From IMG/VR virus record IMGVR_UViG_3300037805_000644, positions 158,940 through 222,939 of that record: a DNA stretch of 64,000 bases, one strand, 5' to 3'. Below the pieces are notes generated by a model. That model had not been told where the DNA came from. It saw only the letters and a list, made by a program, of their open reading frames with translations, and did no database searches. Positions 4,741 through 58,543 of this stretch are shown here, piece after piece; position 1 is the stretch's first letter, and the number at the start of each line of letters is the position of its first letter. The translations under genes and the position numbers were made by a program.

Positions 4741-4754
4741 ATAGGCCGAATACC
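4741..4754 (-). promoter_or_regulatory. putative late promoter motif
   Basis: Minus strand GGT-attcg-GCCTAT, about 37 nt upstream of the 4704 start. Confidence 0.6.
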
Positions 4755-4783
4755 GGGGGGAGTTTCGATTGCCACCACCCTCC

Positions 4784-5680
4784 TTACAGGAACCCTCGGG
4801 GGGAGAGCACACCCCGGCCTACATGAGGGCCGAAAGCGGATCGAATGCCCATACCAAACTTAGGCTGCTGGAGACCCCGGATGAACTTGGTGGTCCGCAC
4901 CTTGGCTTCGGCCGCTTTGTCGAGCTGACCCTCAGCGTTCTGTTTCAGGCTCTCATACTTGCTCGATTTCTCGATGGAGAGGCTAACCCCTCCGATGGAG
5001 TAATCAAATTCGTCAGCCACCCAGTTGGCTGCCACCGCAAACATGGCGTGGACGATGGCCCCCCACAGAACTGCTGTCCTCCACGAGGGCTTCTGGTTTA
5101 CCAGGCGATCAATGGAGCAGAGGCTTTCTGTGCTTGGCGGAAGGCTGTTCCAGTAATCCAGAGCCGTCTCCAGATAGCACAACAACTCTGCATCCTCCCA
5201 GATCTGCCCAAACACCCTGTCGTAATTACCCACCCGCCCGGAGTGCTCCGGGGGTCGGAAATGGTAAAACTTGTCGGGGTTCTGATCTCGGAGGAGCACC
5301 CGCAACTTGCTGATCATCGCCCGTTCCGCCGAGCTGTACTGGATCTGAGTTGCCTCCTCATCCGCAGCCACCGTGAACTCCTGGGTGACCGTCTGCTGAG
5401 GGCTGTTGGCATACTGACGGAAAGTCCAACGGATGCGGTAGGTGCCACCTGTTGCCGCCGGCGGCACCATGAGGGCGGCCCAATACTCACCCATGCTTGG
5501 GTTCACCGGCATTCGGTTGGGGTCCCCGATCAGAACCTCCATCTCCGGCGGTCCGGCATCCACAAAATAGATGGCGTAAGTGATCTCGTAAGCGTTGACG
5601 GGACTCTCATTCGAGTCCACAAGGAACATGTTGAGATCCTTGCGGGCTGTGGTGTACCCGGGGAAAAACTGGGTGGCCAT
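4784..5680 (-). CDS. putative neck / head-tail adaptor protein
   Basis: Ig-like N-terminus, LRVLLRD...WEDAELLCYL helical region and DYSIGGVSLSIEKS beta-hairpin, as seen in neck/adaptor proteins. Inference. Confidence 0.6.
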   Translation of the reverse strand: MATQFFPGYTTARKDLNMFLVDSNESPVNAYEITYAIYFVDAGPPEMEVLIGDPNRMPVNPSMGEYWAALMVPPAATGGTYRIRWTFRQYANSPQQTVTQEFTVAADEEATQIQYSSAERAMISKLRVLLRDQNPDKFYHFRPPEHSGRVGNYDRVFGQIWEDAELLCYLETALDYWNSLPPSTESLCSIDRLVNQKPSWRTAVLWGAIVHAMFAVAANWVADEFDYSIGGVSLSIEKSSKYESLKQNAEGQLDKAAEAKVRTTKFIRGLQQPKFGMGIRSAFGPHVGRGVLSPRGFL

Positions 5681-5683
5681 CGG

Positions 5684-5899
5684 TCAGACTCCTACGGTGG
5701 TGCAGCGGTCGATAAGGGAAGGGACAAACCCTCGGGCAACCCGGATACGGGCCTGGACTTGTGCCTGGGCACCGGCCACCTCCACAAAATCAAGCAAGAA
5801 ATCTGGGCCGTCAGGGAGCACACGGAAAGCGTTGGCCTCGACTGTCTGAACAGCCACACCCTCAACCACCTCCACCTCTACATCAACTCGTCCCGGCAT
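5684..5899 (-). CDS. DUF3467-like small protein (paralog of 14889..15173)
   Basis: ANAFRVL..DFLLDF...ARIRV. Confidence 0.55.
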   Translation of the reverse strand: MPGRVDVEVEVVEGVAVQTVEANAFRVLPDGPDFLLDFVEVAGAQAQVQARIRVARGFVPSLIDRCTTVGV

Positions 5900-5907
5900 A
5901 GCCTGCC

Positions 5908-6174
5908 TTACATGTGGGTCATGGCCTTGAGCATCTGGATTTCCTGGGAGTACGCCAGGGGGGAGATCTTGACCTGCTCCCGACGGAACCAGACGTTTTT
6001 CAACTCTTTGACAGTTTCGGTGTACTCAAACAGGAATTCCTTGCGGTGCCTTTCACCCTCTTTGGGGACGCAATCCACAAAGGGCACATCCGCTACCTTG
6101 AGGAAAGCGGCAAAGTACAAGTCCGTTGTTCGGTAGCACTTGCTGTGATCAATCTCAGGCATTGTTCTCTCCAT
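5908..6174 (-). CDS. DUF5659-like small protein
   Basis: YRTTDLYFAAFLK...EFLF...V.ISPLAY. Confidence 0.6.
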   Translation of the reverse strand: MERTMPEIDHSKCYRTTDLYFAAFLKVADVPFVDCVPKEGERHRKEFLFEYTETVKELKNVWFRREQVKISPLAYSQEIQMLKAMTHM

Positions 6175-6214
6175 CTGCTCCAGCCCTTGAGGGCGGTCTA
6201 CTACAGGCGAGCCT

Positions 6215-6228
6215 ATAGCCAGTCCACC
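6215..6228 (-). promoter_or_regulatory. putative late promoter motif (variant)
   Basis: Minus strand GGT-ggact-GGCTAT, directly after the terminator and about 41 nt upstream of 6174. Confidence 0.45.
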
Positions 6229-6237
6229 ATACCAACG

Positions 6238-6276: not shown

Positions 6277-6297
6277 CAGAGGGTTGAGGGCTGGGGG

Positions 6298-7257: not shown

Positions 7258-7269
7258 TGACCTCTCCTA

Positions 7270-8181: not shown

Positions 8182-9456
8182 TTAAGCCAGCGTGCCGTCG
8201 TCGTTGTAGACGGTCACGATCCGAGCCGGGGTAACGGCGGCGTTGTTGGGGCCGGGCTGGTAGTGGGTTGCCTGGAAGGGCACCAGGTCACTGTCTGGGA
8301 AAAGGGTGACGGAACCGTCCTGCATCTTGCTCAGGTAGCCGCCCAGGAGAGATTGCTGGAAGCTGCCGTCATCGACGGTGTCCCGAATCCCCTTGTGCTC
8401 AGTCTGCTCGATGTCGCCACCGTTCGTGACGGCGAGACCCTTGTGGCGGATCCAGGGGTTCACGGGACCGATCACACCGCCGACCATCTGGGTGTCAAAC
8501 ACCGTGTTGGCCCGGGTGAAAGAACCGAGCTGGGTCGAGTCCCAGACGGTGAGCGGGAGGGCCGCAGCCACCAGCTTCACGCTCCCGGAGGGAAGCTGGT
8601 AACCTCGACCGGCCATCAGCTCCAGGATGTCCAGGGCTACCCCAGTGGAGGCTGATCCACCAGCGGAGGTCAGCTCGGTCCCCGCAGCGGCTGCTGCAAG
8701 CACCGTGTTGATGTTGCCGAGGGCGAGCACCTGTCCCGCATCCACCCGAGCAAGCAAGGCTGCTGCTGCCGCTGCCACGGTGGCTGCCGTCCAGCTCTGC
8801 ACTGCCCGAGTCATCGTGGCGCCGCCAAGGGTGATTTCAACTGCACCCGAGTCCTCAGCCACAGTCGTCTGGAGGTAGTTGGTACCCGGACGCACATCGG
8901 CGACGATGGTCACCGTGTCCACGGTGCCGGCGGTGTTGTCTGCGGAGATGGTCTCCCCAGAGGCCACCCCTCCGATGCTCGTTTCCAAGAGAGCCTGAGA
9001 GGCCGCATCATTGATGGCGCCCACCAGGCTGGTGGCCGTGTTGATGGCCGAGCCCGAGTTGGCTACGTCGTTGAACTCTTGGTTCGCTGCGACGGCACCA
9101 CCGGCTACTGCCGTGAAATCCACCTGGATGCCGGAGGGGCCATCGATGGTGATGATGGTCCCTGCGGCGAGGCCGGCGAGAATCTGGATGGTCTGTGACT
9201 CCGCAGTCAGCCCACCTGCCTCAACTCGGTCCGCCAGGTAGGCAGCCAGCCCCCGAGCGGCGCTTGCGGGCTCATCGGTGCGAGTCACCTGACCCGTGGC
9301 CGCATCGAACGACAGGGCGTCGATCTGGGCACGGTTGAGGTAACGGGTTTGGCCTGGCGGGTCCAGATCGCTCCGAAGACTCGTGTTGGGCACGAGGTCG
9401 AGAACCTGGAGCACGCCGTCGGGAATGTCGGTCCGTGCAAGGCAGATGTACGGCAT
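8182..9456 (-). CDS. putative virion structural protein, paralog 3 of 3, with inserted domain
   Basis: LARTDIPDGVLQVLDLVPNTS, GLAAYLAD, TGVALDILELMAG, VTVYNDDG. Confidence 0.7.
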   Translation of the reverse strand: MPYICLARTDIPDGVLQVLDLVPNTSLRSDLDPPGQTRYLNRAQIDALSFDAATGQVTRTDEPASAARGLAAYLADRVEAGGLTAESQTIQILAGLAAGTIITIDGPSGIQVDFTAVAGGAVAANQEFNDVANSGSAINTATSLVGAINDAASQALLETSIGGVASGETISADNTAGTVDTVTIVADVRPGTNYLQTTVAEDSGAVEITLGGATMTRAVQSWTAATVAAAAAALLARVDAGQVLALGNINTVLAAAAAGTELTSAGGSASTGVALDILELMAGRGYQLPSGSVKLVAAALPLTVWDSTQLGSFTRANTVFDTQMVGGVIGPVNPWIRHKGLAVTNGGDIEQTEHKGIRDTVDDGSFQQSLLGGYLSKMQDGSVTLFPDSDLVPFQATHYQPGPNNAAVTPARIVTVYNDDGTLA

Positions 9457-9509
9457 GTCTTCGGTCTCCTATCTTCGGCAAGTCTGTACTCGCCTATCTG
9501 GGCCAGGCT

Positions 9510-9523
9510 ATAGGCTCTCTATC
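9510..9523 (-). promoter_or_regulatory. putative late promoter motif
   Basis: Minus strand GAT-agaga-GCCTAT, about 54 nt upstream of 9456. Confidence 0.6.
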
Positions 9524-10361
9524 AGACCCCGCCTGAGGCACCCTGGTCCAAGTTGGCGATGATAACGAACGTGGGGTTGCTCCCCGGGGTTACACTGGAC
9601 AGGTAAATCTCTTTCACGGACCCGAAAGTCGTGATCTCAAAGTCACCACCACCGAGGGCCCCCAGGGCCAGGTAAGGCTGGTTCCAGCCGAAACTCACGG
9701 CGAGGCCGTTGGCGGCGTCCTTGTTACGCACCGTCACCGAGGTGGTTGGCCAGGGGAGGACAACACCTGTGGGAGGACCGTTACCGGCGCCCCCGTTGTC
9801 AAGAGTCTGATCGAAACCCGAGGGGGCGTCCCCTTCGGAGACGCCGAGATCGGTGACTCCCCCGGTGATGACCACGGTGCCTTCACGGAGGCTCAATACC
9901 TCCGGGGGCGGGAGGGCCAGGATCGGACCGGTGATGTCAAACCCTGCGTTTGCCCCTGCAAGGGCCTGGGCGGGGCCCGCAGCGCGGATCTGCTGAACAG
10001 CCAAGTACACCTGGGCGTTGTTCGACAGATTCAGGGCAGGGAAATCCTGCAAGGTGAAGATGGCCCTGGTGGCCTTGCCCAGCTTTTCATCACAGGCACC
10101 CCACCCGTTGCGGCGGATGGTCGGGCTGCGGAACATGCGACCCGCCAGTACGGTGAACAGGTTCTGCCGCACGGCGGGGGCTACAACCCCCGACCCGATG
10201 GGAGCACCATACAGGCTATCCACGCTGGACGACGCCCACACCCGGTACCCGGAGGCGTCCGGGGAGTGTGGGATCTGGATGGAGATGCGGTCAGATGTCC
10301 GCAAGACGATGCCCGGGAACTGACCCCAAGGGCCCATATCAAAGTTGTGTGGCACGCTCAT
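9522..10361 (-). CDS. putative virion structural protein (beta-rich)
   Basis: Rich in Gly/Pro/Thr with beta-like patterning; located in the late block. Confidence 0.5.
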   Translation of the reverse strand: MSVPHNFDMGPWGQFPGIVLRTSDRISIQIPHSPDASGYRVWASSSVDSLYGAPIGSGVVAPAVRQNLFTVLAGRMFRSPTIRRNGWGACDEKLGKATRAIFTLQDFPALNLSNNAQVYLAVQQIRAAGPAQALAGANAGFDITGPILALPPPEVLSLREGTVVITGGVTDLGVSEGDAPSGFDQTLDNGGAGNGPPTGVVLPWPTTSVTVRNKDAANGLAVSFGWNQPYLALGALGGGDFEITTFGSVKEIYLSSVTPGSNPTFVIIANLDQGASGGV

Positions 10362-12416: not shown

Positions 12417-13367
12417 TTACTTTCCCAGGTGTTTCTTCACGATATTCTGGATGCCGTGATTGTGGCTGTGAGGCAACACGCAGATGCCAGGGGCCTTCGG
12501 GTCAGGCATCCCTTTCCAGTACACGGTGATGATCCGGGCCGTCCTCTTGGACGGGACAGCGAACACCAGGAAGAGGTTCCATTTCTTGAAAAGGAACTCA
12601 ATGGGCTCTCCCCGGCGGATGGTCATCATGGCGTGTTCGTACTCGTAACTCTTCTGACTTTTCCAGTCATTGAGGCTCTGGCCGAACTGTTTGAGGCCGA
12701 CGCGGATATCCGGGATGCTGATCCCCCGCAGGTCCATGCGGTACTGGGCGTGGCTTGTCAGCTCGATCTGCTTGAACAACCCAGCACCTTGCTCCTTGAG
12801 CGGCTTGTAAACCACTCGGGCCTCCGGGTTGCTCAGGGACTTGCCTTCCTCTACCTTCTCTTGGAGGACATCACGCACCCGGGGTGAGCGAACCTTATCC
12901 TCGATACGGTTGACGACATAGCAGGGACCCGCCTCGGTGGGCAGACCCAAGGCGGGCATGAGGTCCGCCTGCTTGCCCACCCAAGCCGAGGATACCCTCT
13001 GAGAGGCGCTTTCCGACTCGGAGTTCCGATCCATCCCCCCGCCGAAAGCGGGGGATAGGGTCTCCTCGACGAGCTGCTTTTCGGAGAGAGGGAGACGGGC
13101 CCCCAGATAGCTCTCACCCATCTTGACGAGAGCCAGGGCAGTGCGATCCAACACCTGCTCCAGGGCATCCATGCGCTCAGGGGCGGCGATGATAATGTCG
13201 CCAGCCACCTCGAACAGGTGCTCTTTCTGATCCGAAGAGGAGATTAGCTTGCCTGCCCTGTTTACCAGGTGGCGGAGTCGGTGGGTGTCCAAACGAGCCT
13301 GGGTCACACCCTCAGTGATGAGGGCCCAGGCTGCTTGGGAACTGGCGGTTTTGTCGGTCTTGCTCAC
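12417..13367 (-). CDS. protein with a C-terminal DUF4258/BECR-fold RNase-like domain
   Basis: GTG start at 13367 with SD GGAG; LTSHAQYRMDLRGI...LFLVF...IITVYW; internal tag RVSSAWVGKQA. Confidence 0.65.
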   Translation of the reverse strand: MSKTDKTASSQAAWALITEGVTQARLDTHRLRHLVNRAGKLISSSDQKEHLFEVAGDIIIAAPERMDALEQVLDRTALALVKMGESYLGARLPLSEKQLVEETLSPAFGGGMDRNSESESASQRVSSAWVGKQADLMPALGLPTEAGPCYVVNRIEDKVRSPRVRDVLQEKVEEGKSLSNPEARVVYKPLKEQGAGLFKQIELTSHAQYRMDLRGISIPDIRVGLKQFGQSLNDWKSQKSYEYEHAMMTIRRGEPIEFLFKKWNLFLVFAVPSKRTARIITVYWKGMPDPKAPGICVLPHSHNHGIQNIVKKHLGK

Positions 13368-13412
13368 AACGGTCTCCGATGCAGACACAGAAGTCCTCAC
13401 CCAGAGTCGCTG

Positions 13413-13426
13413 ATAGGCGGGCAACC
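13413..13426 (-). promoter_or_regulatory. putative late promoter motif
   Basis: Minus strand GGT-tgccc-GCCTAT, about 46 nt upstream of 13367. Confidence 0.6.
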
Positions 13427-13429
13427 GAA

Positions 13430-17257: not shown

Positions 17258-17433
17258 AGGTTTTTTACTCCTTGTCCTGTCGAGAGAACTACCCTTTATG
17301 AGGTAGATCGTTACCCCCTATCTCCACCAGCCCGGTACTGCGGCTATCCTCAACGGGTAAAGAGTCGGTGGCGACCTGCCTCTCGGTGGTTTCTGGGCTC
17401 GCTGTTTTACCTCGACGACTCAAAGGAGTTGCC

Positions 17434-19199: not shown

Positions 19200-19273
19200 A
19201 GTGTCCCCTTTGTCCCTGTTTTCTCTCTCACCTCACCTACTACCGAGGCGCCGAGAGTTACCTTTTTCCGGGG

Positions 19274-20464: not shown

Positions 20465-20488
20465 GTTTCACCTCACCAGGTGAGGGGT

Positions 20489-20502
20489 ATAAACAAAAAA
20501 CC
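20489..20502 (-). promoter_or_regulatory. putative late promoter motif (variant, overlapping the terminator tail)
   Basis: Minus strand GGT-ttttt-GTTTAT, 25 nt upstream of 20464. Confidence 0.45.
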
Positions 20503-20529
20503 CTGGCAGGTTGCCCTGCCAGGGGTTTT
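20495..20529 (-). terminator. intrinsic terminator after the major capsid gene
   Basis: CCCTGGCAGG-loop-CCTGCCAGGG with a T6 tail on the minus strand. Confidence 0.85.
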
Positions 20530-21474: not shown

Positions 21475-22182
21475 TCAGACGCGCTGGTCGTAGACCAGCT
21501 CGTTCTGGGTTGCGTCAGGTGCCATCTTGAGCACCGCGAGGGTGGTCACGGCGGCGGCACCGAGGCCACCTGCGTGGACGAAGCCTTCGGCACTCTCGGC
21601 GGCAACGGCATCCAACGCCTGGAGGGCGGCGGCGCCATCGACGATGCGACGGGGCTGGAGGTAACCATTGCGGCTGGCCATGAGGCGCATACCGGCGATG
21701 TACGTCAGGGCAGCACCCTGGGCATCCGCACCGATGGCGTTCTGGAGCTGCGTCTCAAACAGGCCGTTGGCATGGGTGCCCTGGCTGCTGAGGTAGGTGT
21801 TCTTACCGCTGGCGGTACCAGGGGTGTTCTCGAAGGCATTGCCGTTCACCGAGTTGATGAACACACCCAGAGCGCGGTAGCCGATCTCCTGGGCGTTGGC
21901 TGCCGCGATGGCGGTCTGCGTGGCCGCATCACCCGGGCCGCCGATCATGTTCTCGCCAGCATCGGGGCGCACAAAGGCGACCGAGCCAGAGAGGACACCG
22001 ACGAGGGTGCTGTCGACCTGCTGAGAGGTGGTGGTCCCAGCGACGGGATCCACAACGGGGTTGGCCTGGATGAACGAGTCGGCTGTCATGACGCCGGTTG
22101 CGTTCCGTACACCAATGTGCAACGGGCGCAGCGCCGAAGACGACTCGGTCCAACCACCACTGGCCTGTCCGAGAAGGGGCAT
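21475..22182 (-). CDS. putative head decoration protein
   Basis: Located between scaffold and MCP; Ala/Gly-rich; start MPLLG with SD GGAGG. Confidence 0.65.
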   Translation of the reverse strand: MPLLGQASGGWTESSSALRPLHIGVRNATGVMTADSFIQANPVVDPVAGTTTSQQVDSTLVGVLSGSVAFVRPDAGENMIGGPGDAATQTAIAAANAQEIGYRALGVFINSVNGNAFENTPGTASGKNTYLSSQGTHANGLFETQLQNAIGADAQGAALTYIAGMRLMASRNGYLQPRRIVDGAAALQALDAVAAESAEGFVHAGGLGAAAVTTLAVLKMAPDATQNELVYDQRV

Positions 22183-22302
22183 AGTGTCCTCCATTCTCCT
22201 GTTTACAGGAGGGTGAGTCTCAAAGGGCTACCCCCCAACAAGGAGGACAGCGGCAAGCTGGAAGGGCTCCCAGACCGGGGCCTTCACTGAATAGGGGGAG
22301 GG

Positions 22303-22316
22303 ATAGACGCTCTATT
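22303..22316 (-). promoter_or_regulatory. putative late promoter motif (decoration-MCP unit)
   Basis: Minus strand AAT-agagc-GTCTAT, directly after a terminator. Confidence 0.6.
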
Positions 22317-22330
22317 GAGAACCCCCCCCT

Positions 22331-22368
22331 AAAAAAGTAAAGCCCACCCGATTTCTCGGATGGGCTTT
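22331..22368 (-). terminator. intrinsic terminator after the scaffold gene
   Basis: AAAGCCCA.CCGA-GAAA-TCGG.TGGGCTTT followed by a T tract. Confidence 0.75.
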
Positions 22369-22404
22369 AGAGGCCGAAACGGGGTTAGAACCCCCGGCTG
22401 GGGG

Positions 22405-26594: not shown

Positions 26595-26675
26595 GTCTTC
26601 GTTCTCCTGTTCCGTCAGGGCCTCAGCGGGATGACAGCTCGGGCGTTGAATGCCCTTCGCTGATATGGGCTGGGT

Positions 26676-26689
26676 ATAGACGAACGATT
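26676..26689 (-). promoter_or_regulatory. putative late promoter motif
   Basis: Minus strand AAT-cgttc-GTCTAT, about 82 nt upstream of 26594. Confidence 0.6.
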
Positions 26690-26732
26690 GAAAATCGGTG
26701 GTTGTAACCCGGTTTACCAGGTCGGTTAAAGT

Positions 26733-36700: not shown

Positions 36701-36808
36701 ACCGGTGGTCTTGCCGTCACTGGGTCCGGCGGACCTGTCCGCCCAGGCCGCAGCTACCTGCTTGACCGCCAAACGCCTTACCTGTGCTCGAAGGATGGGG
36801 TGATCCAC
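33770..36808 (-). CDS. 1012-aa polyvalent protein: 2H phosphoesterase, zincin, SH3-like barrel, ART-PolyVal-like
   Basis: PHITLLY and YRPHTTLDY; HEVGH...YAKTNEREDFAE; GDPVLTGKY..KGYI; LYHGT..F..F, GKGIFLT, GYDCV, EVALFDP. ATGA overlap with the 2346-aa gene. Confidence 0.85.
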   Translation of the reverse strand: MDHPILRAQVRRLAVKQVAAAWADRSAGPSDGKTTGDSTEWTGLFIPLPRHLADQFPKKQSGNDKSPPHITLLYVGNVKGREAEFVSTCQRVVSEELREPVTANLEGLDYFTHPAEERRVAILPIRFSHRMAELRDRLKSAVQDLGIEVGDSYTVYRPHTTLDYLDGLEAEFGGVTPTGSWTFDEIEIWGMPKTHKLKAGSAKVAREALRYVWKGPAQADADWKEISKELVAFSKIHARFKGLSRVPEGKLREKLQEDGFPHALSQPGAHPLHFGRPFGGWVLRSLGRDAIDYSIRRRVRDAAGDLFKSVKFHTSLVVGEGVTLTYRVQVLLTALDSYADQLNSFARQAGVRRFKYQGFSVQNPDRLPEPTIRKFLSGVDYVVGLFKQRGVTPLLHETVHTIIIRHSSEGETAHGWYGDRGRIQLLTAAAGRVDGRMLREWIHEIFLHEVGHHFHLTLMHPEARKEWDSGWIPVQEAEKVDAQTEKDIRGVSLPERMRFWGLLEESEGNLRGIRLRGLDRMKFHAWLHEPLAGGPFVTPKQLRWNRDRGVRMHRLLSDPVRLLSEDYGTSPGESDYQRRMDRVFRQVKSTLGATGVESFTHPTLTKEQVAAYAQDDSAVAQALEALQVPTEYAKTNEREDFAESFVAFMAAPGRLSEMGKFRMQRALSLSGLYGKPLMRLSRDEKVAAARVAKSFTLNLGDPVLTGKYLNSKGYIVDFKKGPKGDPMVVVETEPDKDGKTKKKDVRLFKLRFDEGRARKKAAARVASQYLTRVANIDLKQEGLEGLVSGAGTILYHGTTRSFRAFDMAQSRDDLVSKFYGKGIFLTPSKRVAVRYADANRNIGFPVSIIAELARLNKGGGSLLQSMFDLGHGKGWDHWMATNNLTTGEDIDALMGDMDPNDLNDIAGYILGSKVEPPPAGGSLFSQGTGLPEYVYDSLDTLGLDSAKYRPKVYTVMVKAQNVLVTARKEQARKARKNGYDCVVFHGSGLVDGVPEVALFDPRKVKILKVEPV

Positions 36809-36845
36809 CGGGTGTGCTCCTACAGCCTATACCCTCAACGGGGGT

Positions 36846-36859
36846 ATAGGCTGATCACA
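36846..36859 (-). promoter_or_regulatory. putative late promoter motif within an inverted repeat
   Basis: Minus strand TGT-gatca-GCCTAT, about 38 nt upstream of 36808; part of the CAGCCTATACCC/GGGTATAGGCTG inverted repeat (36823-36853). Confidence 0.55.
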
Positions 36860-38810
36860 GCACTGCGGGCTTGAAACCCTTGAGCCGGGCCTCCAGGCTC
36901 GCAAGCCTGGAGGACATCTCTTGCCACTCATCCCGCAGCTTACCCTCAGTGCTTGCCAGGGCAGCCTTCTTGTGGGGGATGTCGGACTCAAGCTTGGACT
37001 GGAGGTCTCGGTCGAGGTACCCGTCGGAGGACAGAGCCTCGGAGGCTGTCTCTCGAATGGCCTCCTTGAGGAGGACCTTGAAGTTCTCCTGCACCTCCGG
37101 CGTGATGCCCTTGGAGGCGAAGCGGGACATGCCCTCTTCTTTCGGCTTGGCGTAGTTGAGCCCCAAGACCTCAGCAGCCCTCTGGGTGGCGTCCGTGGAC
37201 TCTGCCAGGGCATCTCCCACGCGGCTGTAAACCGAGCGCAGCACCTCATTGAAGGTGGCGTCCTGGAGGGTGAACGTGTCCCGCTCCAGCTTCTCCCGGA
37301 CCGTGTCTGCGTCCAGGTTGAGCAGGTCCAGGATGGTCTCGATATCCAACGAGCCCTTCTGGTACAGGTTGAACAGGGCGTCAAAGGTCTCCTGGTTGTC
37401 CCGCAAGGCAAGGCGGGTGAACGACAGGCGGGGATGCACCACAACCTCAAGGCCGTCTTCGTCAACCTCCATGAAGCCCATACGGCGACACATCGGCTCC
37501 AGAAGCTGCTTGTCCACGAAATCCTGGAGGAGTTCCCGCAAGAGCATGTACCGGACGTTGATCACCTCCAGGTGGATGCGGTCGCCGCTGTAGCTCGACT
37601 CACCGGAGAGCAAAGACTCTGTCACACCGAGGCCCGCATAGAGCTGGCGGTCTGTGAGATCGTACTCACCCGACAGGTCCAGGAGGCGGTTGTCTGCACC
37701 CATCTCCTCCCAGTTGACCTGGAAGTTGGTGATGACGCTGTGGTCAGGATCCTGGAGGGCCAGGTCTACCTGGTCCCGTAGCTCCTCGGTGTCGTTGGCG
37801 TCCATATCCTCAGCCCAGATGAGCCGGTAAGGGGTCATGTGGCGAGAGGCGATGGAGGTCTGGGCCTGCCGGAGCTTGTCTCGGTACACCAGGGTGCGGA
37901 GGCACCGCTGGAGGATCGACTTGCCCCGAGGCTCGTACTGGCTTTTCTTACGGGCCATGAAATGACAAAAGCTGCCGGCATTCGGGTTCGTGTTGAGAGG
38001 GATCTCCTCGCCTCGGAGAACGTAATCAACGACCTCAACAGGCATCGTCTCCACAACCTCGCGGGCCCTCATGTCGCCCTGAGCGGCGCGGTCGATAACG
38101 TCCTTGGTCAGGGAGTCTGGGATGAGGCTTAGGAGCACCTGATCTGTGAAAGGGAAAGCCTCCATCACGACCTGCTCAGGAGGAAGCACCCGAAGGGCTG
38201 TCCAGCCCTGGTAGTTCTCCTTGACCCACTGAACCATGCGTTTCTGTGCGTCGGGGTACTCCCGCTCTTCTTCCTTCAAAGAGCCGTCGGCTGCGATTTC
38301 GCGGTACGTCTCGTGCGTCACGCTCCGAGGCATGTCAGGGCTTGTGTCCTCGGCGAAAATGTTCACCTCACCGATGAGGAAATACTCGTGGACAATCTCC
38401 AATAGGCGGTGAAGCAAGCCCACCTCCCGAGCCCACCGCTCAACGAACCGCATGGCGGCATCCGCCATTTTCTTGTTCTTGGTCCGGGGCTTGCGGAATC
38501 GAAGCTTGCTCAGTGGCAGCTCGCCATGGAGATCGATGGCCTGGCCTACGAAAGGATCATTGTCGTAGAAAAAGCGGAAATAGTTCCGCATCTCGGCAGT
38601 GGACTGGGGCAGCTCCAGGAAGTCCGGGCTCAGCTCAGGGCTGTAAAAGTTACCGCCCGAGCCCGTCATCGTCCCCCCCGCCTGGGGGAACGCCATCTTC
38701 ATCATCTTTGAGGTGCCTGTGACCGTGCGGCGAGGCTTACCCGTCTTGACGTTAGCCCTCTCGGGGAGAGTCGCCACTCGTACGGTGTGTTTGGGATTGT
38801 TCTTCTTCAT
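36855..38810 (-). CDS. portal protein
   Basis: FFYDNDPFVGQAIDLH, EYFLIGEV, RGKSILQRC..LVYRDKLRQAQ; downstream of the terminase. Confidence 0.85.
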   Translation of the reverse strand: MKKNNPKHTVRVATLPERANVKTGKPRRTVTGTSKMMKMAFPQAGGTMTGSGGNFYSPELSPDFLELPQSTAEMRNYFRFFYDNDPFVGQAIDLHGELPLSKLRFRKPRTKNKKMADAAMRFVERWAREVGLLHRLLEIVHEYFLIGEVNIFAEDTSPDMPRSVTHETYREIAADGSLKEEEREYPDAQKRMVQWVKENYQGWTALRVLPPEQVVMEAFPFTDQVLLSLIPDSLTKDVIDRAAQGDMRAREVVETMPVEVVDYVLRGEEIPLNTNPNAGSFCHFMARKKSQYEPRGKSILQRCLRTLVYRDKLRQAQTSIASRHMTPYRLIWAEDMDANDTEELRDQVDLALQDPDHSVITNFQVNWEEMGADNRLLDLSGEYDLTDRQLYAGLGVTESLLSGESSYSGDRIHLEVINVRYMLLRELLQDFVDKQLLEPMCRRMGFMEVDEDGLEVVVHPRLSFTRLALRDNQETFDALFNLYQKGSLDIETILDLLNLDADTVREKLERDTFTLQDATFNEVLRSVYSRVGDALAESTDATQRAAEVLGLNYAKPKEEGMSRFASKGITPEVQENFKVLLKEAIRETASEALSSDGYLDRDLQSKLESDIPHKKAALASTEGKLRDEWQEMSSRLASLEARLKGFKPAVL

Positions 38811-42916: not shown

Positions 42917-44865
42917 CAGCCATCCTCCCGGGTGTTCACGTAAAGGCCATCAAACAGCAGCTCACCCAGCTTCTCCACAGTGGGCGTGTCGTTGAGAGAC
43001 ACGTCCATACTCGCCTGGAGCCCGAACTCGGACACGAGACTCGTGTGGCGGCTTGTGAACAGCGAGCCGGTGATCTCAGCATCTGATGCGTTGGACAGCT
43101 TGATGGCCTCATCCTGGATGACCTTGAGGCGGTCGGGGCCCAGGTCGGATGCCTTGATCAGAGGCTTGTTGTACACCGAGCAGTGGCCGGTGCCGTCAAG
43201 CATGGCCTGGCGGTGGACACAAGAACCACAACGGCTCATCGCCAGGACACGCCGCACCTGGTTGGTGCGGTGCGTTGCAGACGCTGCCTTGCAGCCCTGG
43301 GTGCCTGTTGTGGAGGCGTAAGCGGCAGCGTCGACATAGACGTTGCCTGCCAGCCCCTCATGCCTTGCACGCAGCTCTCGCAGCTCAGGGGCGGCTTCCC
43401 GAAGCACCTCACTGCTCCAGCGGGCGTTGAGGAGCTGATCGAGGTCTCCCCCCATCCAGCCTTCATTCATGGCCTTGCGGGTCCAGCTCGCCAACCGCTG
43501 GAACTCAGCGGTTTTGGTGAGGACCCCCTGGCTGGCCTGACGCTCCATCTGAGCGTTCAGGGTGTGGCTCACACCAGCACCCTCGTAAGTGCCTTCCTTG
43601 GGGGCGTTGACCATCTCACCGGCCCGGATGAGCATGTCATCCGTCTGGAGCTTCCGCAGATCGAACACCTGCTCGGCGCTCAGCGACCCTGCGGACATCC
43701 ACTTGGCCAGCTTCCCTAGTGCCTTGGCCCTGCGAGCCTGGGAACCGTCTCGGCTGGGCAGCGTGGGCAGAGCCTTGGGAGCCGCTGCATGGAACTGTGC
43801 AAGGGCCTCCTTGGCGGTGATGGTGTCCGCAGGTCGGACCTCCACCGGCTTCGGTCGCTGGAGGGGGACCTCCGCAGCGGCAGGGCCTGTTTGGAAAGCA
43901 GCACGCAGTGCAGCACGAGGATCCCCGGCCATGTCCACGGAGTACCCGGCGGCACGAAGCCTCGGAGCATAGTGGTTGCGGGCCCCTTTCCAGGGAACCT
44001 CGGAGACAGCGATCATGCCAAGCTTGGTGCCTACGGTCGGGTCATCCGTGATGACGTACCGGGCCCCTCGGGCTTTCCGCTTGATGTCCTGAACCCACTT
44101 CCCGTTCTTGATTCCGGGGAAAGCACTGGCACGGACAAACACGTTGCCCACCAACCCGGCATCCTGCTTGAGGTGCGAGACCACCCCTCGGGTGTGAGCG
44201 GCCTTATCCCCCAGAGAGGCAACCAGATCCCGCTTGATCTCAGCCACGGACTTCCCAAAGTGGGCGTCCCGGACAGCCTTCTGGGCAGCCCGGCGGACGG
44301 CGCTCATGTCCTCTGCCGCCAGCTTGGGTCCAGGGGTTGCGGGCTGAGGGCTCTTGTTCATCCGCTGATGATAACGCTCGGCAGCCAGGTCCTTGGTGGG
44401 TACCCGGTTAACCCCGTCAGTGCGGCGACCGAAGCCCCAGGCACCTTCCAGCTCCTCAAGCCCCTTGTCGTCAGGGCCCACAGGCAAGCGGTCAGGGTCC
44501 TGGCCTTGAGTGGGGTCAAGCCAAGACAGATCCACGGCGGCGGCATCCCTCTCGAAAAACTCGCCGAGCTGGAGGCCCGAGGAGAAATCGTTCATCAGGG
44601 CAGCCTCGTCGAGAGGGGCCTGTACAGAGGCCATCAGGCCCCCTGGGAGGCTCTGCATCCCGTTGGATCCGGCACTGCTCCCCGGAGGGGGTCCCGGGGT
44701 TGCCCCGGGCTGAGCCGGGCGGTCTTTCCCCTGGGTCTGCTCGAAATGGTGACCATCGAGCCCATAGTTGGAGCCCTGGCCCCACTGAAAATCATCCCCG
44801 TCTGGGGTGCCGGAGTCGGCCAGGATCTCTGCGGCCCAATCGAGGGCCTTCTTCTTGTCGCTCAT
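42916..44865 (-). CDS. hypothetical head-associated protein with a Cys cluster
   Basis: 649 aa; CGSCVH...CSVYNK; K/R-x-A sites (KLAAE, KTAE). Confidence 0.6.
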   Translation of the reverse strand: MSDKKKALDWAAEILADSGTPDGDDFQWGQGSNYGLDGHHFEQTQGKDRPAQPGATPGPPPGSSAGSNGMQSLPGGLMASVQAPLDEAALMNDFSSGLQLGEFFERDAAAVDLSWLDPTQGQDPDRLPVGPDDKGLEELEGAWGFGRRTDGVNRVPTKDLAAERYHQRMNKSPQPATPGPKLAAEDMSAVRRAAQKAVRDAHFGKSVAEIKRDLVASLGDKAAHTRGVVSHLKQDAGLVGNVFVRASAFPGIKNGKWVQDIKRKARGARYVITDDPTVGTKLGMIAVSEVPWKGARNHYAPRLRAAGYSVDMAGDPRAALRAAFQTGPAAAEVPLQRPKPVEVRPADTITAKEALAQFHAAAPKALPTLPSRDGSQARRAKALGKLAKWMSAGSLSAEQVFDLRKLQTDDMLIRAGEMVNAPKEGTYEGAGVSHTLNAQMERQASQGVLTKTAEFQRLASWTRKAMNEGWMGGDLDQLLNARWSSEVLREAAPELRELRARHEGLAGNVYVDAAAYASTTGTQGCKAASATHRTNQVRRVLAMSRCGSCVHRQAMLDGTGHCSVYNKPLIKASDLGPDRLKVIQDEAIKLSNASDAEITGSLFTSRHTSLVSEFGLQASMDVSLNDTPTVEKLGELLFDGLYVNTREDG

Positions 44866-45560
44866 GCCGTTCTCCCTGAGTAGCGTGCCGCCAGGCGTGC
44901 CGCCTGGTCCCGAATGGTTCGGGCAGCCAGCTTGGGCATACCGCTGTCGCCGTCGCCCTTCATGCCATTGCCCCCGCCGGAGTCCCCGGACTCTTCCTCA
45001 CCCTCGGCCCACTCCTCGGGGTCCTCTCGGATCTCTTCCACATCGTCCATGATCTCCTTGACCTCCTCACGGGACCGAGGGTCGCCGCCGGAGTCAGTGA
45101 CATCAGGGTGCCAGTGGACTGCGTTGATCTCGTCGTAGACGGTGTCTGTGATCGCAGACAGGGCCTCACAGCAGTTCATGAGCATTTTCCTCATGTCCTT
45201 GATGGGCATGATGTAGCCCTTACCGCCGAGGTTCCCGTCCGGGCTGACCCTCTGAGACTTGATCTTGGTGAAGGTGGCGTAAGCACTCTGGGAGTGGCCC
45301 AAGGCCATGAGGGATGCCCTCAGGACCTTGGCCAGAGGCTCCAGGTTCTTGGCGTTGAACTCGTAGTCGGGGTCGATCTCTCGGGCGGAGGCACCAGGGG
45401 GGTTCCAGGCCCACTCGTTGTGGTCCCCTCCCCTGTCCTTAATGAAGCGAACCTCACCGGCCATCTTCGAGGTAGGCGCACCCGCCCCCTGACGCTTCTG
45501 GAACGCCTGAGCCACCCGCTCGGTGGCCTGGGGGTCTTTCTGTGTGGTCCTCTTGGACAT
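44862..45560 (-). CDS. tagged late protein
   Basis: N-terminal RVAQAFQKRQG and C-terminal RLAARYSGRTA* tags. Confidence 0.7.
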   Translation of the reverse strand: MSKRTTQKDPQATERVAQAFQKRQGAGAPTSKMAGEVRFIKDRGGDHNEWAWNPPGASAREIDPDYEFNAKNLEPLAKVLRASLMALGHSQSAYATFTKIKSQRVSPDGNLGGKGYIMPIKDMRKMLMNCCEALSAITDTVYDEINAVHWHPDVTDSGGDPRSREEVKEIMDDVEEIREDPEEWAEGEEESGDSGGGNGMKGDGDSGMPKLAARTIRDQAARLAARYSGRTA

Positions 45561-45595
45561 GCTGCGGTTACCTCCGGTCCTATTGGACAGGGCTT

Positions 45596-45609
45596 ATAGA
45601 CCAAGTACC
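45596..45609 (-). promoter_or_regulatory. putative late promoter motif
   Basis: Minus strand GGT-acttg-GTCTAT, about 36 nt upstream of 45560. Confidence 0.6.
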
Positions 45610-45649
45610 CGTGTCACCTGGTCGGAGACACGAACTTCATGGTTGGCCC

Positions 45650-47487: not shown

Positions 47488-47489
47488 GT

Positions 47490-48173
47490 CTACACCACCA
47501 CGTCGTATCCGACATCAGCGGTCTCAGCGACCTGCAACTCGATGCCGAGGGCTACGGTGAACCCTGTCTTGGTCTTGTTGAGGACCCGGACAGGGAAAAA
47601 GTCTTCGGGCTCCAGCAGGACCCTGTAATTGGCCGTGGGCAGTGCATCTGCGAAGACCACTGCTTTTTGACTGGCGTCGGCCTGGGAGAACGTCAGAGTC
47701 CCGCCCATGGCGCTCGCGGTTGCGGTCGAGGCGTAAACCACCCAGTCCACCCCCCGCACATCACCTGCGCCGCCGTAAGCTGAGGCCACCACCAGGTCAA
47801 ACCCCGTGGTGGTCTTGTTCTCCACCCGGACGGGTGTCCCGTCCGGGCTCGTGACCTGGACACGGTAGCTGATGTTGTTCAACAACCCCCCGGCGAGAGC
47901 CACGGCTCGGGTGGTCTGGCCGGAGAAATTCTCGGTGCCGTTGGCAACTGAGGACTCACTGACCAGCAAGGCGGCCTGGTCCATCGCATCGTTGATGTCC
48001 TGAACCACTTCCTCGGAGAGTCCGGTGATCGAGTCGGTGATCAAACCCCTCGGCCCACGGATGTTGCGGACCGAGGTGGAAGACTGCTCATCAATGACGA
48101 TGTCGAACAGGTACGCTTGCCCGCCACGGGCGGACTTGTACGTGAACACCGTCTGGACTCGGGAGAGGGCCAC
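47490..48173 (-). CDS. virion protein with two repeated beta-sandwich modules
   Basis: YRV...VRV.NKT.TGF occurs twice. Confidence 0.65.
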   Translation of the reverse strand: MALSRVQTVFTYKSARGGQAYLFDIVIDEQSSTSVRNIRGPRGLITDSITGLSEEVVQDINDAMDQAALLVSESSVANGTENFSGQTTRAVALAGGLLNNISYRVQVTSPDGTPVRVENKTTTGFDLVVASAYGGAGDVRGVDWVVYASTATASAMGGTLTFSQADASQKAVVFADALPTANYRVLLEPEDFFPVRVLNKTKTGFTVALGIELQVAETADVGYDVVV

Positions 48174-48183
48174 GGTTTACCCC

Positions 48184-49002
48184 TTAACGCCAGACTGAGG
48201 ACTGGTACTTGGTGCGGATCTTGCCCCGCTTGAGGGCTTCCTCCAGAGCGCCACTCTTCATCTTCTTAACGGCTTCCTCGTTGGCTTTGAGCCACTTGAA
48301 AAACTTCCGTGCGCCCGCAGGGGCCGTGGATACCAGCTTGGTGTAGTAAGAATCACCGCTGTGCCCATAACCCCTCAACTGCTCATCGGTGTACCCGTTG
48401 TTCAGGGTAATGGAGAACCCCGTCCACTTGGCGTCGATGAAAAACTCATCCTTGACCGCGATCTCGATGGGGGCGTAGTCCACGGGCTCCACGTTCAGGT
48501 AAAACACCTCGTCCACCCGAGGCATCTGCCGCTCATCAAAGCTATGCCGGAACCAGTCAGGGATGATGTCCCCCTTACCTGCCGCGATGTCTTTCTCCCA
48601 GTCCTTGAAAGCCTTGTCGATGGCCTTTCGGAGAGCTTGGGAAGCTTTCTCCGGGGTCATTGAAGCCGTGGGCTTCCAATCCCTCTTCAAGTTCTCCAGC
48701 ATCAGGTGATTGGAGTGGATCGGGTTCAGCTTCGAGCCGATATCAAAAGTGTACCTCTTGAGCCTCTTCCTGCCCTTCTGGGGCAGCTCCTCGATCACAG
48801 CGTAAGATTGGGGGTGCCCTTTCCAACGGATGCGGACCTTGTCCCCGACCAGGATCTCATCCCAGCCAGACCGGGAATCGATCCCACCCACACCGGCGGC
48901 CTTACCTGGAGCGTGCTTCTTGAGGAGAGGCACCAGGTGCTTGCGGGTGCTGGGCACCTCAGTGGCGAGCTTTTGGAGCTTGCTGTACAGGTTGGTGGGC
49001 AT
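48184..49002 (-). CDS. hypothetical late protein with an N-terminal leader helix
   Basis: Start MPTNL (SD AAGGAGG); LYSKLQKLA..PSTRKHLVPLLKKHA..KAA. Confidence 0.65.
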   Translation of the reverse strand: MPTNLYSKLQKLATEVPSTRKHLVPLLKKHAPGKAAGVGGIDSRSGWDEILVGDKVRIRWKGHPQSYAVIEELPQKGRKRLKRYTFDIGSKLNPIHSNHLMLENLKRDWKPTASMTPEKASQALRKAIDKAFKDWEKDIAAGKGDIIPDWFRHSFDERQMPRVDEVFYLNVEPVDYAPIEIAVKDEFFIDAKWTGFSITLNNGYTDEQLRGYGHSGDSYYTKLVSTAPAGARKFFKWLKANEEAVKKMKSGALEEALKRGKIRTKYQSSVWR

Positions 49003-49039
49003 GGGCCCCTCCTTTGTCTCTCTTGGGTTGAGGCTCATA

Positions 49040-49348
49040 TCACCAAACCCCGGTGGTCTCGTAACCACGTTTTTCAAACCAGTCCTTGAGGGCGACCATC
49101 GCCTCTCGATTGGCGGACCACAGGGTCACACTGTCGAAATTTTCCCGGATACCGAGATCAGGGATGGTGGGCACGCTCTCCATGGCCACCCTGCCGTCCC
49201 GTTGGCTGCGGAGCAGCCCTGGGACATAACGGTGATCACGGACGCCGTACAGGACTGAGAAACGGTGCTCTGCGTGCGCCAGCCGGCGAACCCACTTACG
49301 AGCCACCCTTCTGGCCATCACCACACGTCTCTCATTCTGGTCGGACAT
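49040..49348 (-). CDS. small tagged late protein
   Basis: RRVARKWVRRLA tag near the N-terminus. Confidence 0.7.
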   Translation of the reverse strand: MSDQNERRVVMARRVARKWVRRLAHAEHRFSVLYGVRDHRYVPGLLRSQRDGRVAMESVPTIPDLGIRENFDSVTLWSANREAMVALKDWFEKRGYETTGVW

Positions 49349-49393
49349 GCTTACTCCACCAAAGCCGTATCCACGCTCTACCGGGGCGAGGGG

Positions 49394-49407
49394 ATAGGCG
49401 ATCTACC
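49394..49407 (-). promoter_or_regulatory. putative late promoter motif (first of the late block)
   Basis: Minus strand GGT-agatc-GCCTAT, about 46 nt upstream of 49348. Confidence 0.6.
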
Positions 49408-58542: not shown

Positions 58543-58543
58543 C

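What the first reader, a model, noticed from the sequence alone, without database searches (positions are those of the whole stretch)
4741..49407. Repeated 14-bp late-promoter-like motif RRT-N5-GYCTAT
Minus-strand copies occur at 4741, 6215, 9510, 13413, 20489, 22303, 26676, 36846, 45596 and 49394. All lie at gene boundaries, 25-120 nt upstream of a start codon, and three directly follow terminators. Spacing between the RRT and (C)TAT parts is fixed, and no -35 box is evident. A weaker copy lies at 24094 inside the protease gene, upstream of the scaffold. The first copy sits just downstream of the sigma-region-4-like and NusG-like genes. Inference: a phage-specific late promoter, possibly read with the help of these factors and analogous to the -10-only T4 late promoter.
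Basis: partly seen in the sequence, partly recalled or inferred. Interest (0 to 1): 0.7.

Follow-up and report, generated by a model that had tools for sequence, protein, structure and literature searches.

The report
Late-gene promoter motif of huge phages
The repeated 14-base motif is real and is the core of a phage-specific promoter class placed in front of the structural-gene operons of an uncultured clade of huge (400-600 kb) phages; it is probably read with a conserved phage protein made of two sigma-region-4 DNA-binding domains, but no transcript data exist to prove it.

Summary
Seven of the ten listed sites fit the stated pattern exactly (1.1 expected), and three miss it by one base. 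All ten are intergenic and in gene sense. The "weak copy" at 24094 is not a site.

- **Genome-wide test.** In the 223-kb record, all 12 exact matches lie in the 7.7% of DNA that is intergenic (p=5e-14).
- **Blind rediscovery.** Motif discovery on upstream regions finds the motif again in this genome and in a 402-kb relative that is 70% identical. PWM scans find it in a 536-kb relative and in 78 related contigs (73 sense hits, 1 antisense).
- **Full element.** The core is a 16-mer, C-G-R-T-a-g-N3-G-C-C-T-A-T-a. A C-rich stretch follows, then a purine-rich block 12-19 nt after CTAT.
- **Promoter behaviour.** It almost never shares an upstream region with a second, stronger, ECF-like promoter class (GGTAAC-N15-GTAG) found before non-structural genes. 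It stands alone in divergent gene gaps and sits directly after terminators.
- **Gene class.** It precedes the major-capsid operon and baseplate and tail-fibre genes.
- **Candidate reader.** A site directly follows the gene for a tandem sigma-4 protein in four genomes.

The T4 "-10-only" analogy fails, because the element has two or three parts. Whether CTAT or the purine block acts as the -10 is unresolved. No RNA data were available.

The parts
49393..49408 (-). Class B site (16-mer CGGTAGATCGCCTATC). It lies directly after the tandem sigma-4 gene and before the 102-aa gene 49040-49348.
   Evidence: 20.2 bits. The G001 ortholog has an identical 15-mer and an unrelated 11-nt spacer. The same position is occupied in G003 and G004.
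45595..45610 (-). Class B site before gene 44862-45560.
   Evidence: 14.3 bits; orthologous site in G001.
36845..36860 (-). Class B site before the 1012-aa and 2346-aa genes. Its box 2 is part of an 11-bp inverted repeat.
   Evidence: 16.2 bits; ortholog in G001; sequence.
26675..26690 (-). Class B site before gene 26016-26594 and the three genes after it.
   Evidence: 13.9 bits; ortholog in G001.
22302..22317 (-). Class B site before the 239-aa gene and major-capsid gene operon (21475-22194, 20574-21446). It follows terminator 22369-22338.
   Evidence: 14.8 bits. Terminator. Equivalent sites occur in many of 47 distinct relatives. Major capsid protein assigned by phrog_2522, 1.4e-50.
20488..20503 (-). 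Class B-like site (TTAT variant) overlapping the T-run of terminator 20524-20501, before gene 19274-20464.
   Evidence: 13.0 bits. Terminator. No ortholog in G001 and not conserved in the family, so this is the least secure of the ten sites.
13412..13427 (-). Class B site before gene 12417-13388.
   Evidence: 15.8 bits; ortholog in G001.
9509..9524 (-). Class B site before gene 8182-9456. It is nearly palindromic.
   Evidence: 18.9 bits; ortholog in G001.
6214..6229 (-). Class B site before gene 5908-6162.
   Evidence: 15.5 bits; ortholog in G001.
4740..4755 (-). Class B site before gene 4381-4704.
   Evidence: 19.2 bits. No B hit at the mapped place in G001.
17333..17348 (+). Class B site on the + strand, in sense orientation before + gene 17434-18933.
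   Evidence: 14.6 bits. It lies back-to-back with class A site 17289-17315(-) in a 176-nt divergent gap.
49415..50044 (-). Tandem sigma-4 protein (209 aa), the candidate specificity factor.
   Evidence: Pfam Sigma70_r4 1.7e-9 with two matched stretches. 721 homologs. AF2 model pLDDT 82. Foldseek hits only sigma-4 domains.
50139..50684 (-). NusG-like protein (181 aa).
   Evidence: Pfam NusG 1.2e-3, below its cut-off. phrog_6386 'transcription antiterminator' 5.6e-7. Syntenic in G001 and G003.
22338..22369 (-). Intrinsic terminator (14-bp stem plus T-run) 20 nt upstream of site 22303.
20501..20524 (-). Intrinsic terminator after the major-capsid gene. Its T-run overlaps site 20489.
   Evidence: A terminator after the capsid gene is present in nearly all relatives.

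Best explanation
**What it is.** The 14-mer is the core of a phage-specific promoter class, here called class B. It heads the structural (late-type) operons of an uncultured clade of huge phages.

**Anatomy.**
- The full element is the 16-mer C-G-R-T-a-g-N3-G-C-C-T-A-T-a. Its two conserved blocks are 10 bp apart centre to centre.
- A C-rich stretch follows at +3..+10 after CTAT.
- A purine-rich, C-depleted block follows at +12..+19.

**Shown.** The motif exists, is strand- and position-specific, and is conserved. It is exclusive with a second promoter class. It is linked by gene order to the tandem sigma-4 gene.

**Inferred.**
- Host RNA polymerase is used, because no phage polymerase was found.
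- A phage factor redirects the polymerase to these sites. The best candidate is the tandem sigma-4 protein, with one helix-turn-helix per block.
- C-T-A-T-a is the -10/-12-like element.
- Transcription starts about 8-12 nt after CTAT, at the change from C-rich to purine-rich sequence. Leaders can therefore be as short as 12-16 nt and begin with a Shine-Dalgarno-like run.
- The NusG-like neighbour may help these transcripts pass the terminators that lie between late operons.
For: **Real and non-random.** 7 exact matches against 1.1 expected. 12/12 exact matches are intergenic, p=4.6e-14.

**Blind rediscovery.** EM recovers the motif after class A is masked in G000, and independently in G001.

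**Position.** 26/28 PWM hits in G000 and 41/44 in G001 are intergenic and in gene sense.

**Clade-wide.** 73 sense against 1 antisense hits in 922 kb from 78 relatives with 43-68% GC. 38/63 hits in G003 fall in its 17% intergenic DNA.

**Footprint.** For 18 orthologous G000/G001 pairs, identity is 0.83-1.0 at the conserved block positions and 0.61-0.78 in the spacer between them, across -15..+1. Flanks are mostly 0.2-0.5.

**Promoter rather than leader element.**
- Class A and class B share only 3 of the 44 divergent-gap upstream regions that carry either one.
- Class B stands alone in 14 divergent gaps, some only 81-155 nt long.
- Sites directly follow strong terminators.
- A and B lie back-to-back at 17289-17348.

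**Gene class.** B precedes the capsid operon and baseplate and tail-fibre genes. A precedes thymidine kinase and a CCA/polyA-polymerase-like gene.

**CTAT as the -10-like block.**
- It is the most informative block, about 2 bits per position, against 0.5 or less for the downstream block.
- It is the AT-richest point.
- CTAT-to-start distances have a sharp lower bound at 22-25 nt with an SD in between.

**Factor.** The tandem sigma-4 protein has invariant recognition helices across the 35 aligned representatives of its 721 homologs. There is one copy each in G000, G001 and G003. A B site follows its gene in G000, G001, G003 and G004.

**Polymerase.** No phage RNA polymerase was detected.
Against: - No transcript 5' ends exist. 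No RNA run was listed.
- Gene calls and start codons come from my own simple caller.
- The matrices were trained on intergenic DNA, so part of the intergenic enrichment is built in. The exact-pattern test is free of this.
- The downstream purine block resembles the -10-like GTAG of class A and sits at a fixed distance. It starts at +12/+13 in 33 of 94 sites, which fits the rival geometry.
- Sigma-4 domains normally read -35 regions, not -10 regions.
- Leader-length comparison with class A is ambiguous.
- Binding of the tandem sigma-4 protein to the motif is untested. The complex job was not folded.
- 'Late' timing rests on gene content only.
- G000 is an incomplete record (42% by CheckV).
Confidence: 0.55

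Rival explanations
1. **Same promoter class, different geometry.** The 16-mer lies at about -40..-25. There the tandem sigma-4 protein binds it in place of a -35 contact, working like a T4 MotA box. The purine block (rGT[A/G]RR, 12-13 nt after CTAT) is the true -10, read by the same sigma domain 2 that reads the GTAG of class A. Transcription then starts about 24-26 nt after CTAT, and the shortest-leader genes would be leaderless.
For: - RGTRRR starts at +12/+13 in 33 of 94 sites and almost nowhere else.
- In G003 the block is (G/A)TAGG, mostly 13 nt after CTAT.
- It resembles the class A -10-like GTAG found in all three genomes.
- Sigma-4 domains are -35 readers.
- Start codons cluster at exactly 24 nt after CTAT, which would put them at the predicted start site.
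Against: - The block carries 0.5 bit or less per position, whereas CTAT is nearly invariant.
- Conservation between orthologs is only 0.5-0.6 there.
- Several short-leader sites carry canonical AGGAGG at SD distance, not a GT box. That SD would then go untranscribed.
- Box 1 lies about 5 bp further from the block than the -35 of class A lies from its GTAG.
Confidence: 0.27
2. [quoted passage not shown] Box 1 (CGGTAG) equals the central hexamer of the E. coli ops element GGCGGTAGCGTG. That sequence is recalled from memory, not tested.
For: - A NusG-like gene lies two genes upstream of the first site.
- The motif is strand-specific and lies before operons.
Against: - Sites sit directly after terminators and alone in short divergent gaps, with no other promoter upstream.
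- A and B share only 3 of the 44 divergent-gap upstream regions that carry either one.
- Positions 4-5 vary (GG, GA, AA), and the rest of ops is absent.
- Twenty-eight or more copies per 223 kb is unlike the one-per-operon-leader use of ops.
Confidence: 0.04
3. **Operator for a repressor, or another DNA-level signal.** A dimeric helix-turn-helix protein would bind the partial palindrome ATAG-N5-CTAT, and the real promoters would lie elsewhere and go unseen.
For: - Boxes 1 and 2 form a partial inverted repeat.
- Boxes 2 and 3 form perfect inverted repeats at 36846 and 9510.
Against: - No other conserved element exists in these gaps, and sigma-70-type matches are not above shuffles.
- The motif is directional (73 sense to 1 antisense), which a symmetric operator would not be.
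- Positions 6-7 of the putative half-site are weakly conserved.
Confidence: 0.06
4. **RNA-level signal.** The motif would be a processing site or a hairpin in a polycistronic transcript.
For: - The motif is strand-specific and intercistronic.
Against: - The box 1/box 2 pairing is not maintained. A6 is 31/58 and G7 is 34/58, while their partners are 52-57/58, so there is no covariation.
- Sites occur in divergent gaps where no upstream transcript exists.
Confidence: 0.03

Closest known systems
T4 late promoters (gp55/gp33/gp45 sliding clamp)
   Same: - A phage-specific element precedes the structural genes.
- There is no canonical -35.
- The host polymerase is redirected by small phage factors.
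- The regulator genes sit next to replication genes; a clamp-loader gene is adjacent here.
   Different: - T4 uses a single 8-bp TATAAATA. Here the element is a bipartite 16-mer with an invariant upstream block plus a third block.
- The candidate factor is made of two sigma-4 domains. It is neither a sigma-2-like gp55 nor a non-DNA-binding gp33.
- Clamp dependence is unknown.
T4 middle promoters (MotA box plus AsiA, 'sigma appropriation')
   Same: If the rival geometry holds, a phage DNA-binding protein reads a box that replaces the -35, while a -10 is kept.
   Different: - No AsiA match was found, but that search had no positive control. MotA was not searched.
- The box sequence and the fold of the protein differ.
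- The geometry is unproven.
Sigma-54 -24/-12 promoters (TGGCAC-N5-TTGC)
   Same: - Two duplex blocks lie one helical turn apart.
- There is a GG in the upstream block.
- The total length is 16 bp.
- If transcription starts about 12 nt after CTAT, the blocks fall at -25/-24 and -15..-12.
   Different: - The downstream block is TAT, not the defining GC.
- No sigma-54 or enhancer-binding ATPase is encoded by five related phage genomes.
- The candidate reader is a sigma-70-family domain.
ECF-type sigma promoters (AAC-N16-CGT)
   Same: The companion class A motif (GGTAAC-N15-GTAG; ACTTAC-N15-CGTAGAT in G003) has this architecture. G001 encodes a weak ECF-like sigma.
   Different: In class B the two conserved blocks are 4-5 nt apart rather than 16-17.
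SPO1 late promoters (gp33/gp34; -35 CGTTAGA, -10 GATATT; recalled from memory)
   Same: Box 1 in some relatives reads CGTTAGA. Both are phage late-class promoters read by phage sigma-like factors.
   Different: The spacing to the second block is 4-5 nt here, against about 18 nt in SPO1. No homology was tested.

Membership tests
T4-type late promoter | A single -10 element TATAAATA is sufficient. | tested here: not met
   The consensus is CGRTag-N3-GCCTATa. The upstream T is 58/58 and 152/152. There is no TATAAATA.
T4-type late promoter | A gp55-like (sigma region 2-like) factor and a gp33 co-activator are encoded. | tested here: inconclusive
   There is no Sigma70_r2 hit in G000. The only hit in G001 is weak (0.004) and lies in a different 373-aa ORF. 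No gp55- or gp33-specific model was searched.
T4-type late promoter | Activation by the sliding clamp. | not testable with these tools
   Only adjacency of a clamp-loader gene (50700-52109; PF13177, 2.6e-25).
Sigma-70 / ECF -35/-10 promoter | Two blocks separated by a 16-18 nt spacer. | tested here: not met
   The class B blocks are 4-5 nt apart. Sigma-70 consensus matches are at or below shuffles. Class A does meet this feature.
Sigma-54 -24/-12 promoter | Two blocks about one helical turn apart, with GG in the upstream block. | tested here: met
   G is 87% and G/A is 67/26% at the two positions before the invariant T. Block centres are 10 bp apart.
Sigma-54 -24/-12 promoter | A GC dinucleotide in the downstream block. 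| tested here: not met
   The downstream block is C-T-A-T at 88-100%.
Sigma-54 -24/-12 promoter | Sigma-54 and an AAA+ enhancer-binding protein are available. | tested here: not met
   PF04552 has no hit. PF00158 has only sub-threshold P-loop hits in G000-G004. The host is unknown.
RfaH-type ops element | A 12-nt element in a transcribed leader downstream of a promoter. | tested here: not met
   Only CGGTAG is shared. Sites follow terminators and stand alone in divergent gaps.
MotA/AsiA sigma appropriation | An AsiA-like anti-sigma is encoded. | tested here: inconclusive
   PF09010 has no hit in five genomes, but the search had no positive control.
Sigma-70 family region 4 (protein 49415-50044) | A region 4.1/4.2 helix-turn-helix fold. 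| tested here: met
   Pfam Sigma70_r4 1.7e-9, above its cut-off, with two stretches. Foldseek matches sigma-4 domains at rmsd about 1 A over 55-60 residues.
Sigma-70 family sigma factor (protein 49415-50044) | Region 2 (core binding and -10 recognition). | tested here: not met
   No region 2 match. The model shows two sigma-4-like bundles plus short N- and C-terminal helices.
NusG family (protein 50139-50684) | NGN domain plus KOW domain. | tested here: inconclusive
   Pfam NusG 1.2e-3 (19.8 bits, below the 22.2 cut-off) and KOW 9e-3. phrog_6386 'antiterminator' 5.6e-7.

The most novel reading that the evidence does not exclude
The tandem sigma-4 protein may be a new kind of promoter-specificity factor. 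It would read a duplex bipartite element with one helix-turn-helix per block, in a -24/-12-like geometry, without any sigma region 2. Late transcription in this huge-phage clade would then use a recognition mode that resembles sigma-54 in shape but is built from sigma-70 parts. Its conserved neighbours, the NusG-like protein and the clamp loader, might take part.
Probability: 0.15. Interest if true: 0.85.

Novelty: new variant of a known kind. Interest (0 to 1): 0.55.

Why it matters
**Gap filled.** Huge phages (over 400 kb) are known almost only from metagenomes, and how they time their gene expression is essentially unstudied. This analysis gives a clade found in hundreds of contigs two explicit promoter classes. 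It also gives an operon map of the structural region and a concrete, testable candidate regulator.

**Practical use.**
- The motifs can improve gene-start and operon annotation in these genomes.
- They can mark late genes among the many proteins of unknown function.
- They supply parts for expression studies.

**If the protein reads the element.** A protein made of two sigma-4 domains that lacks region 2 would extend the known ways in which phages redirect host RNA polymerase.

Tried and rejected
**Searches that led nowhere**
- RNA evidence: no RNA run was listed, only seawater DNA runs. Transcription start sites could not be checked and read laying was not used.
- Complex prediction on the protein plus the 38-bp site was not folded. 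It is no evidence either way.
- The strict pattern GGTA-N6-YTATA in four more distant relatives was not above its control, because it is too strict.
- Literature: the huge-phage survey PMC7162821 mentions phage sigma-70 and AsiA-like genes but no promoter motifs. The accession of the nearest GenBank relative appears in no paper. The tandem sigma-4 protein matches no cultured phage record; its only hit is that uncultured relative.

**Sites and readings rejected**
- Site 24094 scores -1.1 bits.
- Site 20489 is not conserved in relatives and is kept only as a weak member.
- A box 1/box 2 RNA hairpin shows no covariation.
- Leaderless class A mRNAs in G003: the 'ATG' in the discovered motif is part of a conserved 5' leader. 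True starts lie about 35 nt further on.

**Components not found**
- Phage RNA polymerase: no T7-like, beta or beta' match. A conserved 1731-aa protein carrying DVDGD has no Pfam or PDB match, and its Atlas leads point to a baseplate hub.
- Sigma-54, enhancer-binding protein and AsiA: no matches.

**Left unresolved**
- Leader-length comparison between class A and class B, meant to decide which block is the -10, was ambiguous.

Full report
**Context.** The window is bases 158,940-222,939 of a 222,939-bp linear viral record (61% GC, CheckV completeness 42%). Nearly all genes lie on the - strand. DNA runs that hold it are seawater metagenomes, and no RNA run was listed. Three related records were fetched whole or in part:
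- G001: 402,383 bp with terminal repeats, syntenic with G000 at about 70% nucleotide identity.
- G003: 536,053 bp, 52% GC, rated complete.
- 78 further contigs found through the major capsid protein, with 43-68% GC.

**Observation.**
- The exact pattern has 7 matches in the window, all on the - strand, against 1.1 expected.
- Sites 6215, 20489 and 36846 each miss the pattern by one base.
- All ten listed sites score 13-20 bits with a 16-mer matrix. The copy at 24094 scores -1.1 bits and is rejected.
- Across the whole record all 12 exact matches are intergenic, although only 7.7% of the DNA is (p=4.6e-14). In G001 the count is 16 of 21 (p=3e-11).
- An extra site at 17333-17348 on the + strand lies before the only + strand gene nearby, in sense orientation.
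- Strong terminators directly precede sites 20489 and 22303.
- Sigma-70-type matches are not above shuffles.

**Blind motif discovery.**
- Expectation-maximisation on 106 upstream regions of G000 first found a different and much stronger motif, class A: GGTAAC-N12-GGTAGTAGGTGAGGTGA. It has about 19 sites on both strands, always in gene sense, 13-40 nt before start codons.
Of 28 hits at 15 bits or more, 26 are intergenic and nearly all are in gene sense.
- The same two classes came out independently from G001. Class A is GGTAAC-N15-GTAGG, with 89 hits of which 84 are intergenic. Class B has 44 hits of which 41 are intergenic.
- G003 has class A as ACTTACTTT-N11-GCGTAGAT, with 130 sites. Class B there has 38 of 63 hits in the 17% of the genome that is intergenic.
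- In 922 kb from 78 relatives, the core matrix gives 73 sense hits and 1 antisense hit at 13 bits.

**Anatomy of class B.**
- In 58 sites the core is C-G-R-T-a-g-N3-G-C-C-T-A-T-a. The T of box 1 is invariant and C-T-A-T is 52-57/58.
- In 152 sites the core spans -14..+1 relative to the last T of CTAT.
- T-rich positions lie just upstream, a C-rich stretch at +3..+10, and a purine-rich, C-depleted block at +12..+19 that carries 0.5 bit or less per position.
- The pattern RGTRRR starts at +12 or +13 in 33 of 94 sites and almost nowhere else.

**Conservation.** 18 of 28 G000 sites have a class B site at the orthologous place in G001.
- Anchored identity is 0.83-1.0 at the conserved block positions and 0.61-0.78 in the spacer, across -15..+1. 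Flanks are mostly 0.2-0.5.
- At site 49394 the 15-mer and the GGTAGAGC block are identical in both genomes, while the 11-nt spacer between them is unrelated.
- Before the gene upstream of the capsid gene, box 1, box 2 and a third block can be seen by eye in most of 47 distinct relatives, whatever their GC content.

**Why a promoter.**
- In divergent gaps each gene needs its own promoter. There, class A stands alone 27 times, class B alone 14 times, and both occur together only 3 times. Some of the B-alone gaps are only 81-155 nt long.
- At 17289-17348 a class A site and a class B site lie back-to-back, each facing its own gene.
- Sites sit directly after terminators.
- These facts argue against a leader element such as an ops-like site, and against an RNA processing signal. 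The strong directionality argues against a symmetric operator. Box 1 and box 2 show no pairing covariation.

**Gene classes.**
- Class B precedes the operon that holds the major capsid gene (phrog_2522, 1.4e-50), baseplate-like and tail-fibre-like genes, and many large proteins of unknown function.
- Class A precedes thymidine kinase, a CCA/polyA-polymerase-like gene and many small genes of unknown function.
- No class B site lies in the replication module at 50,100-64,000.
- 'Late' timing is therefore inferred from gene content, not measured.

**Who reads it.**
- No T7-like, beta or beta' polymerase match was found. A conserved 1731-aa protein with a DVDGD motif looks like a baseplate protein. 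Host polymerase is therefore assumed.
- Protein 49415-50044 has a strong sigma region 4 match and a second, weaker one, but no region 2.
- It has 721 homologs of about 200 aa. The recognition helices are nearly invariant in the 35 sequences aligned.
- A confident model (pLDDT 82) shows two sigma-4-like bundles, and these match only sigma-4 domains in the PDB.
- G000, G001 and G003 each hold exactly one copy.
- The gene order clamp loader, NusG-like, tandem sigma-4, class B site, 102-aa gene is kept in G000, G001 and G003. A class B site also follows the gene in G004.
- Two helix-turn-helix domains and two blocks 10 bp apart fit one another, but binding is untested (one search gave no result).
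- G001 also encodes a weak ECF-like sigma. It is a candidate reader of the ECF-like class A.

**Which block is the -10.**
- For CTAT: it holds the highest information. It is the AT-richest point and is followed by a GC-rich stretch. CTAT-to-start distances have a sharp lower bound at 22-25 nt with canonical SD sequences in between. The purine block is weakly conserved between orthologs.
- For the purine block: its distance is fixed. It resembles the GTAG of class A. Sigma-4 domains normally read -35 regions.
- Leader-length comparison is ambiguous.
- I put 0.55 on a start about 8-12 nt after CTAT and 0.27 on the rival geometry.

**Comparison with known systems.**
- The element works like a phage late-promoter class, as in T4 or SPO1.
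- It is not a T4-type late promoter: there is no TATAAATA, it is bipartite, and an invariant upstream block is needed.
- Its two-block geometry resembles sigma-54 promoters. However, the defining GC is absent, and no sigma-54 or enhancer-binding protein is encoded.
- No AsiA match was found, though that search had no positive control.
- I found no description of this motif. The huge-phage survey reports sigma and AsiA-like genes only.

**Verdict.** The motif is real, clade-wide and very probably a promoter class for structural genes. It is a new variant of a known kind. The mechanism and the start site remain to be shown.

Noticed in passing
window 19228-19262(-), 962-996(+), 17289-17315(-), 61855-61881(-); about 19 sites in G000, 89 in G001, 130 in G003: A second, stronger promoter class (class A) with ECF-like architecture: GGTAAC-N12-15-GTAG(TAGGTGAGGTGA).
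   Followed up: yes
window about 22208-22223 (-), just before the start of gene 21475-22194: A conserved leader hairpin (CCCTG-TAAA-CAGGG-AG in relatives, CTCCTG-TAAA-CAGGAG here) sequesters the Shine-Dalgarno sequence. It is present in most of 47 relatives, with compensatory stem changes (CTCTG/CAGAG, CACCT/AGGTG). It may be a translational operator for the gene before the capsid gene.
   Followed up: partly
G003, downstream of its class A sites: Class A promoters of the 536-kb relative are followed by a conserved 5' stem-loop (GGGCAC...GTGCCC). An AAGGAA ribosome-binding site follows, about 35 nt before the start codon.
   Followed up: partly
window 26733-33773 (-) and 33770-36808 (-): A 2346-aa protein carries a eukaryotic-type topoisomerase I catalytic core, plus GNAT and phosphoribosyltransferase-like pieces. 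A 1012-aa protein carries 2'-5' RNA ligase and ADP-ribosyltransferase (polyvalent) domains. Both lie behind class B site 36846.
   Followed up: no
L112:3444-5048 (-) (G000 3444-5048, outside the window): The thymidine kinase gene is interrupted by an intein (Hint plus LAGLIDADG domains).
   Followed up: no
window 36820-36860 (-) and 9485-9524 (-): At these two sites box 2 and the downstream block form perfect inverted repeats (AGCCTATACCC...GGGTATAGGCT; GCCTAT...ATAGGC). This hints at an extra regulator or an RNA hairpin at the 5' end.
   Followed up: no
L117:8821-14016 (-) (G000 108821-114016): A 1731-aa protein has an FYQDVDGDFVFK motif that is identical in G001 and G003. It has no Pfam or PDB match, and its Atlas leads point to baseplate hub proteins.
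   Followed up: partly
G001 85015-86136 (-) (L107:1165-2286): A 373-aa protein has weak ECF-sigma matches (regions 2 and 4). It sits in a region crowded with class A sites, in a part of the genome missing from the G000 fragment.
   Followed up: partly
G000 88459-88536 (+) and G004 572506-572844 (+): Further sigma-4-like reading frames: a 94-aa open frame in G000 and a 222-aa paralog of the tandem sigma-4 protein in G004.
   Followed up: no
window 20574-21446 (-): The major capsid protein is unusually conserved, at 86-96% identity in the 80 contigs kept out of 532 matching stretches in IMG/VR. These include records of 536 and 619 kb with 43-68% GC.
   Followed up: partly
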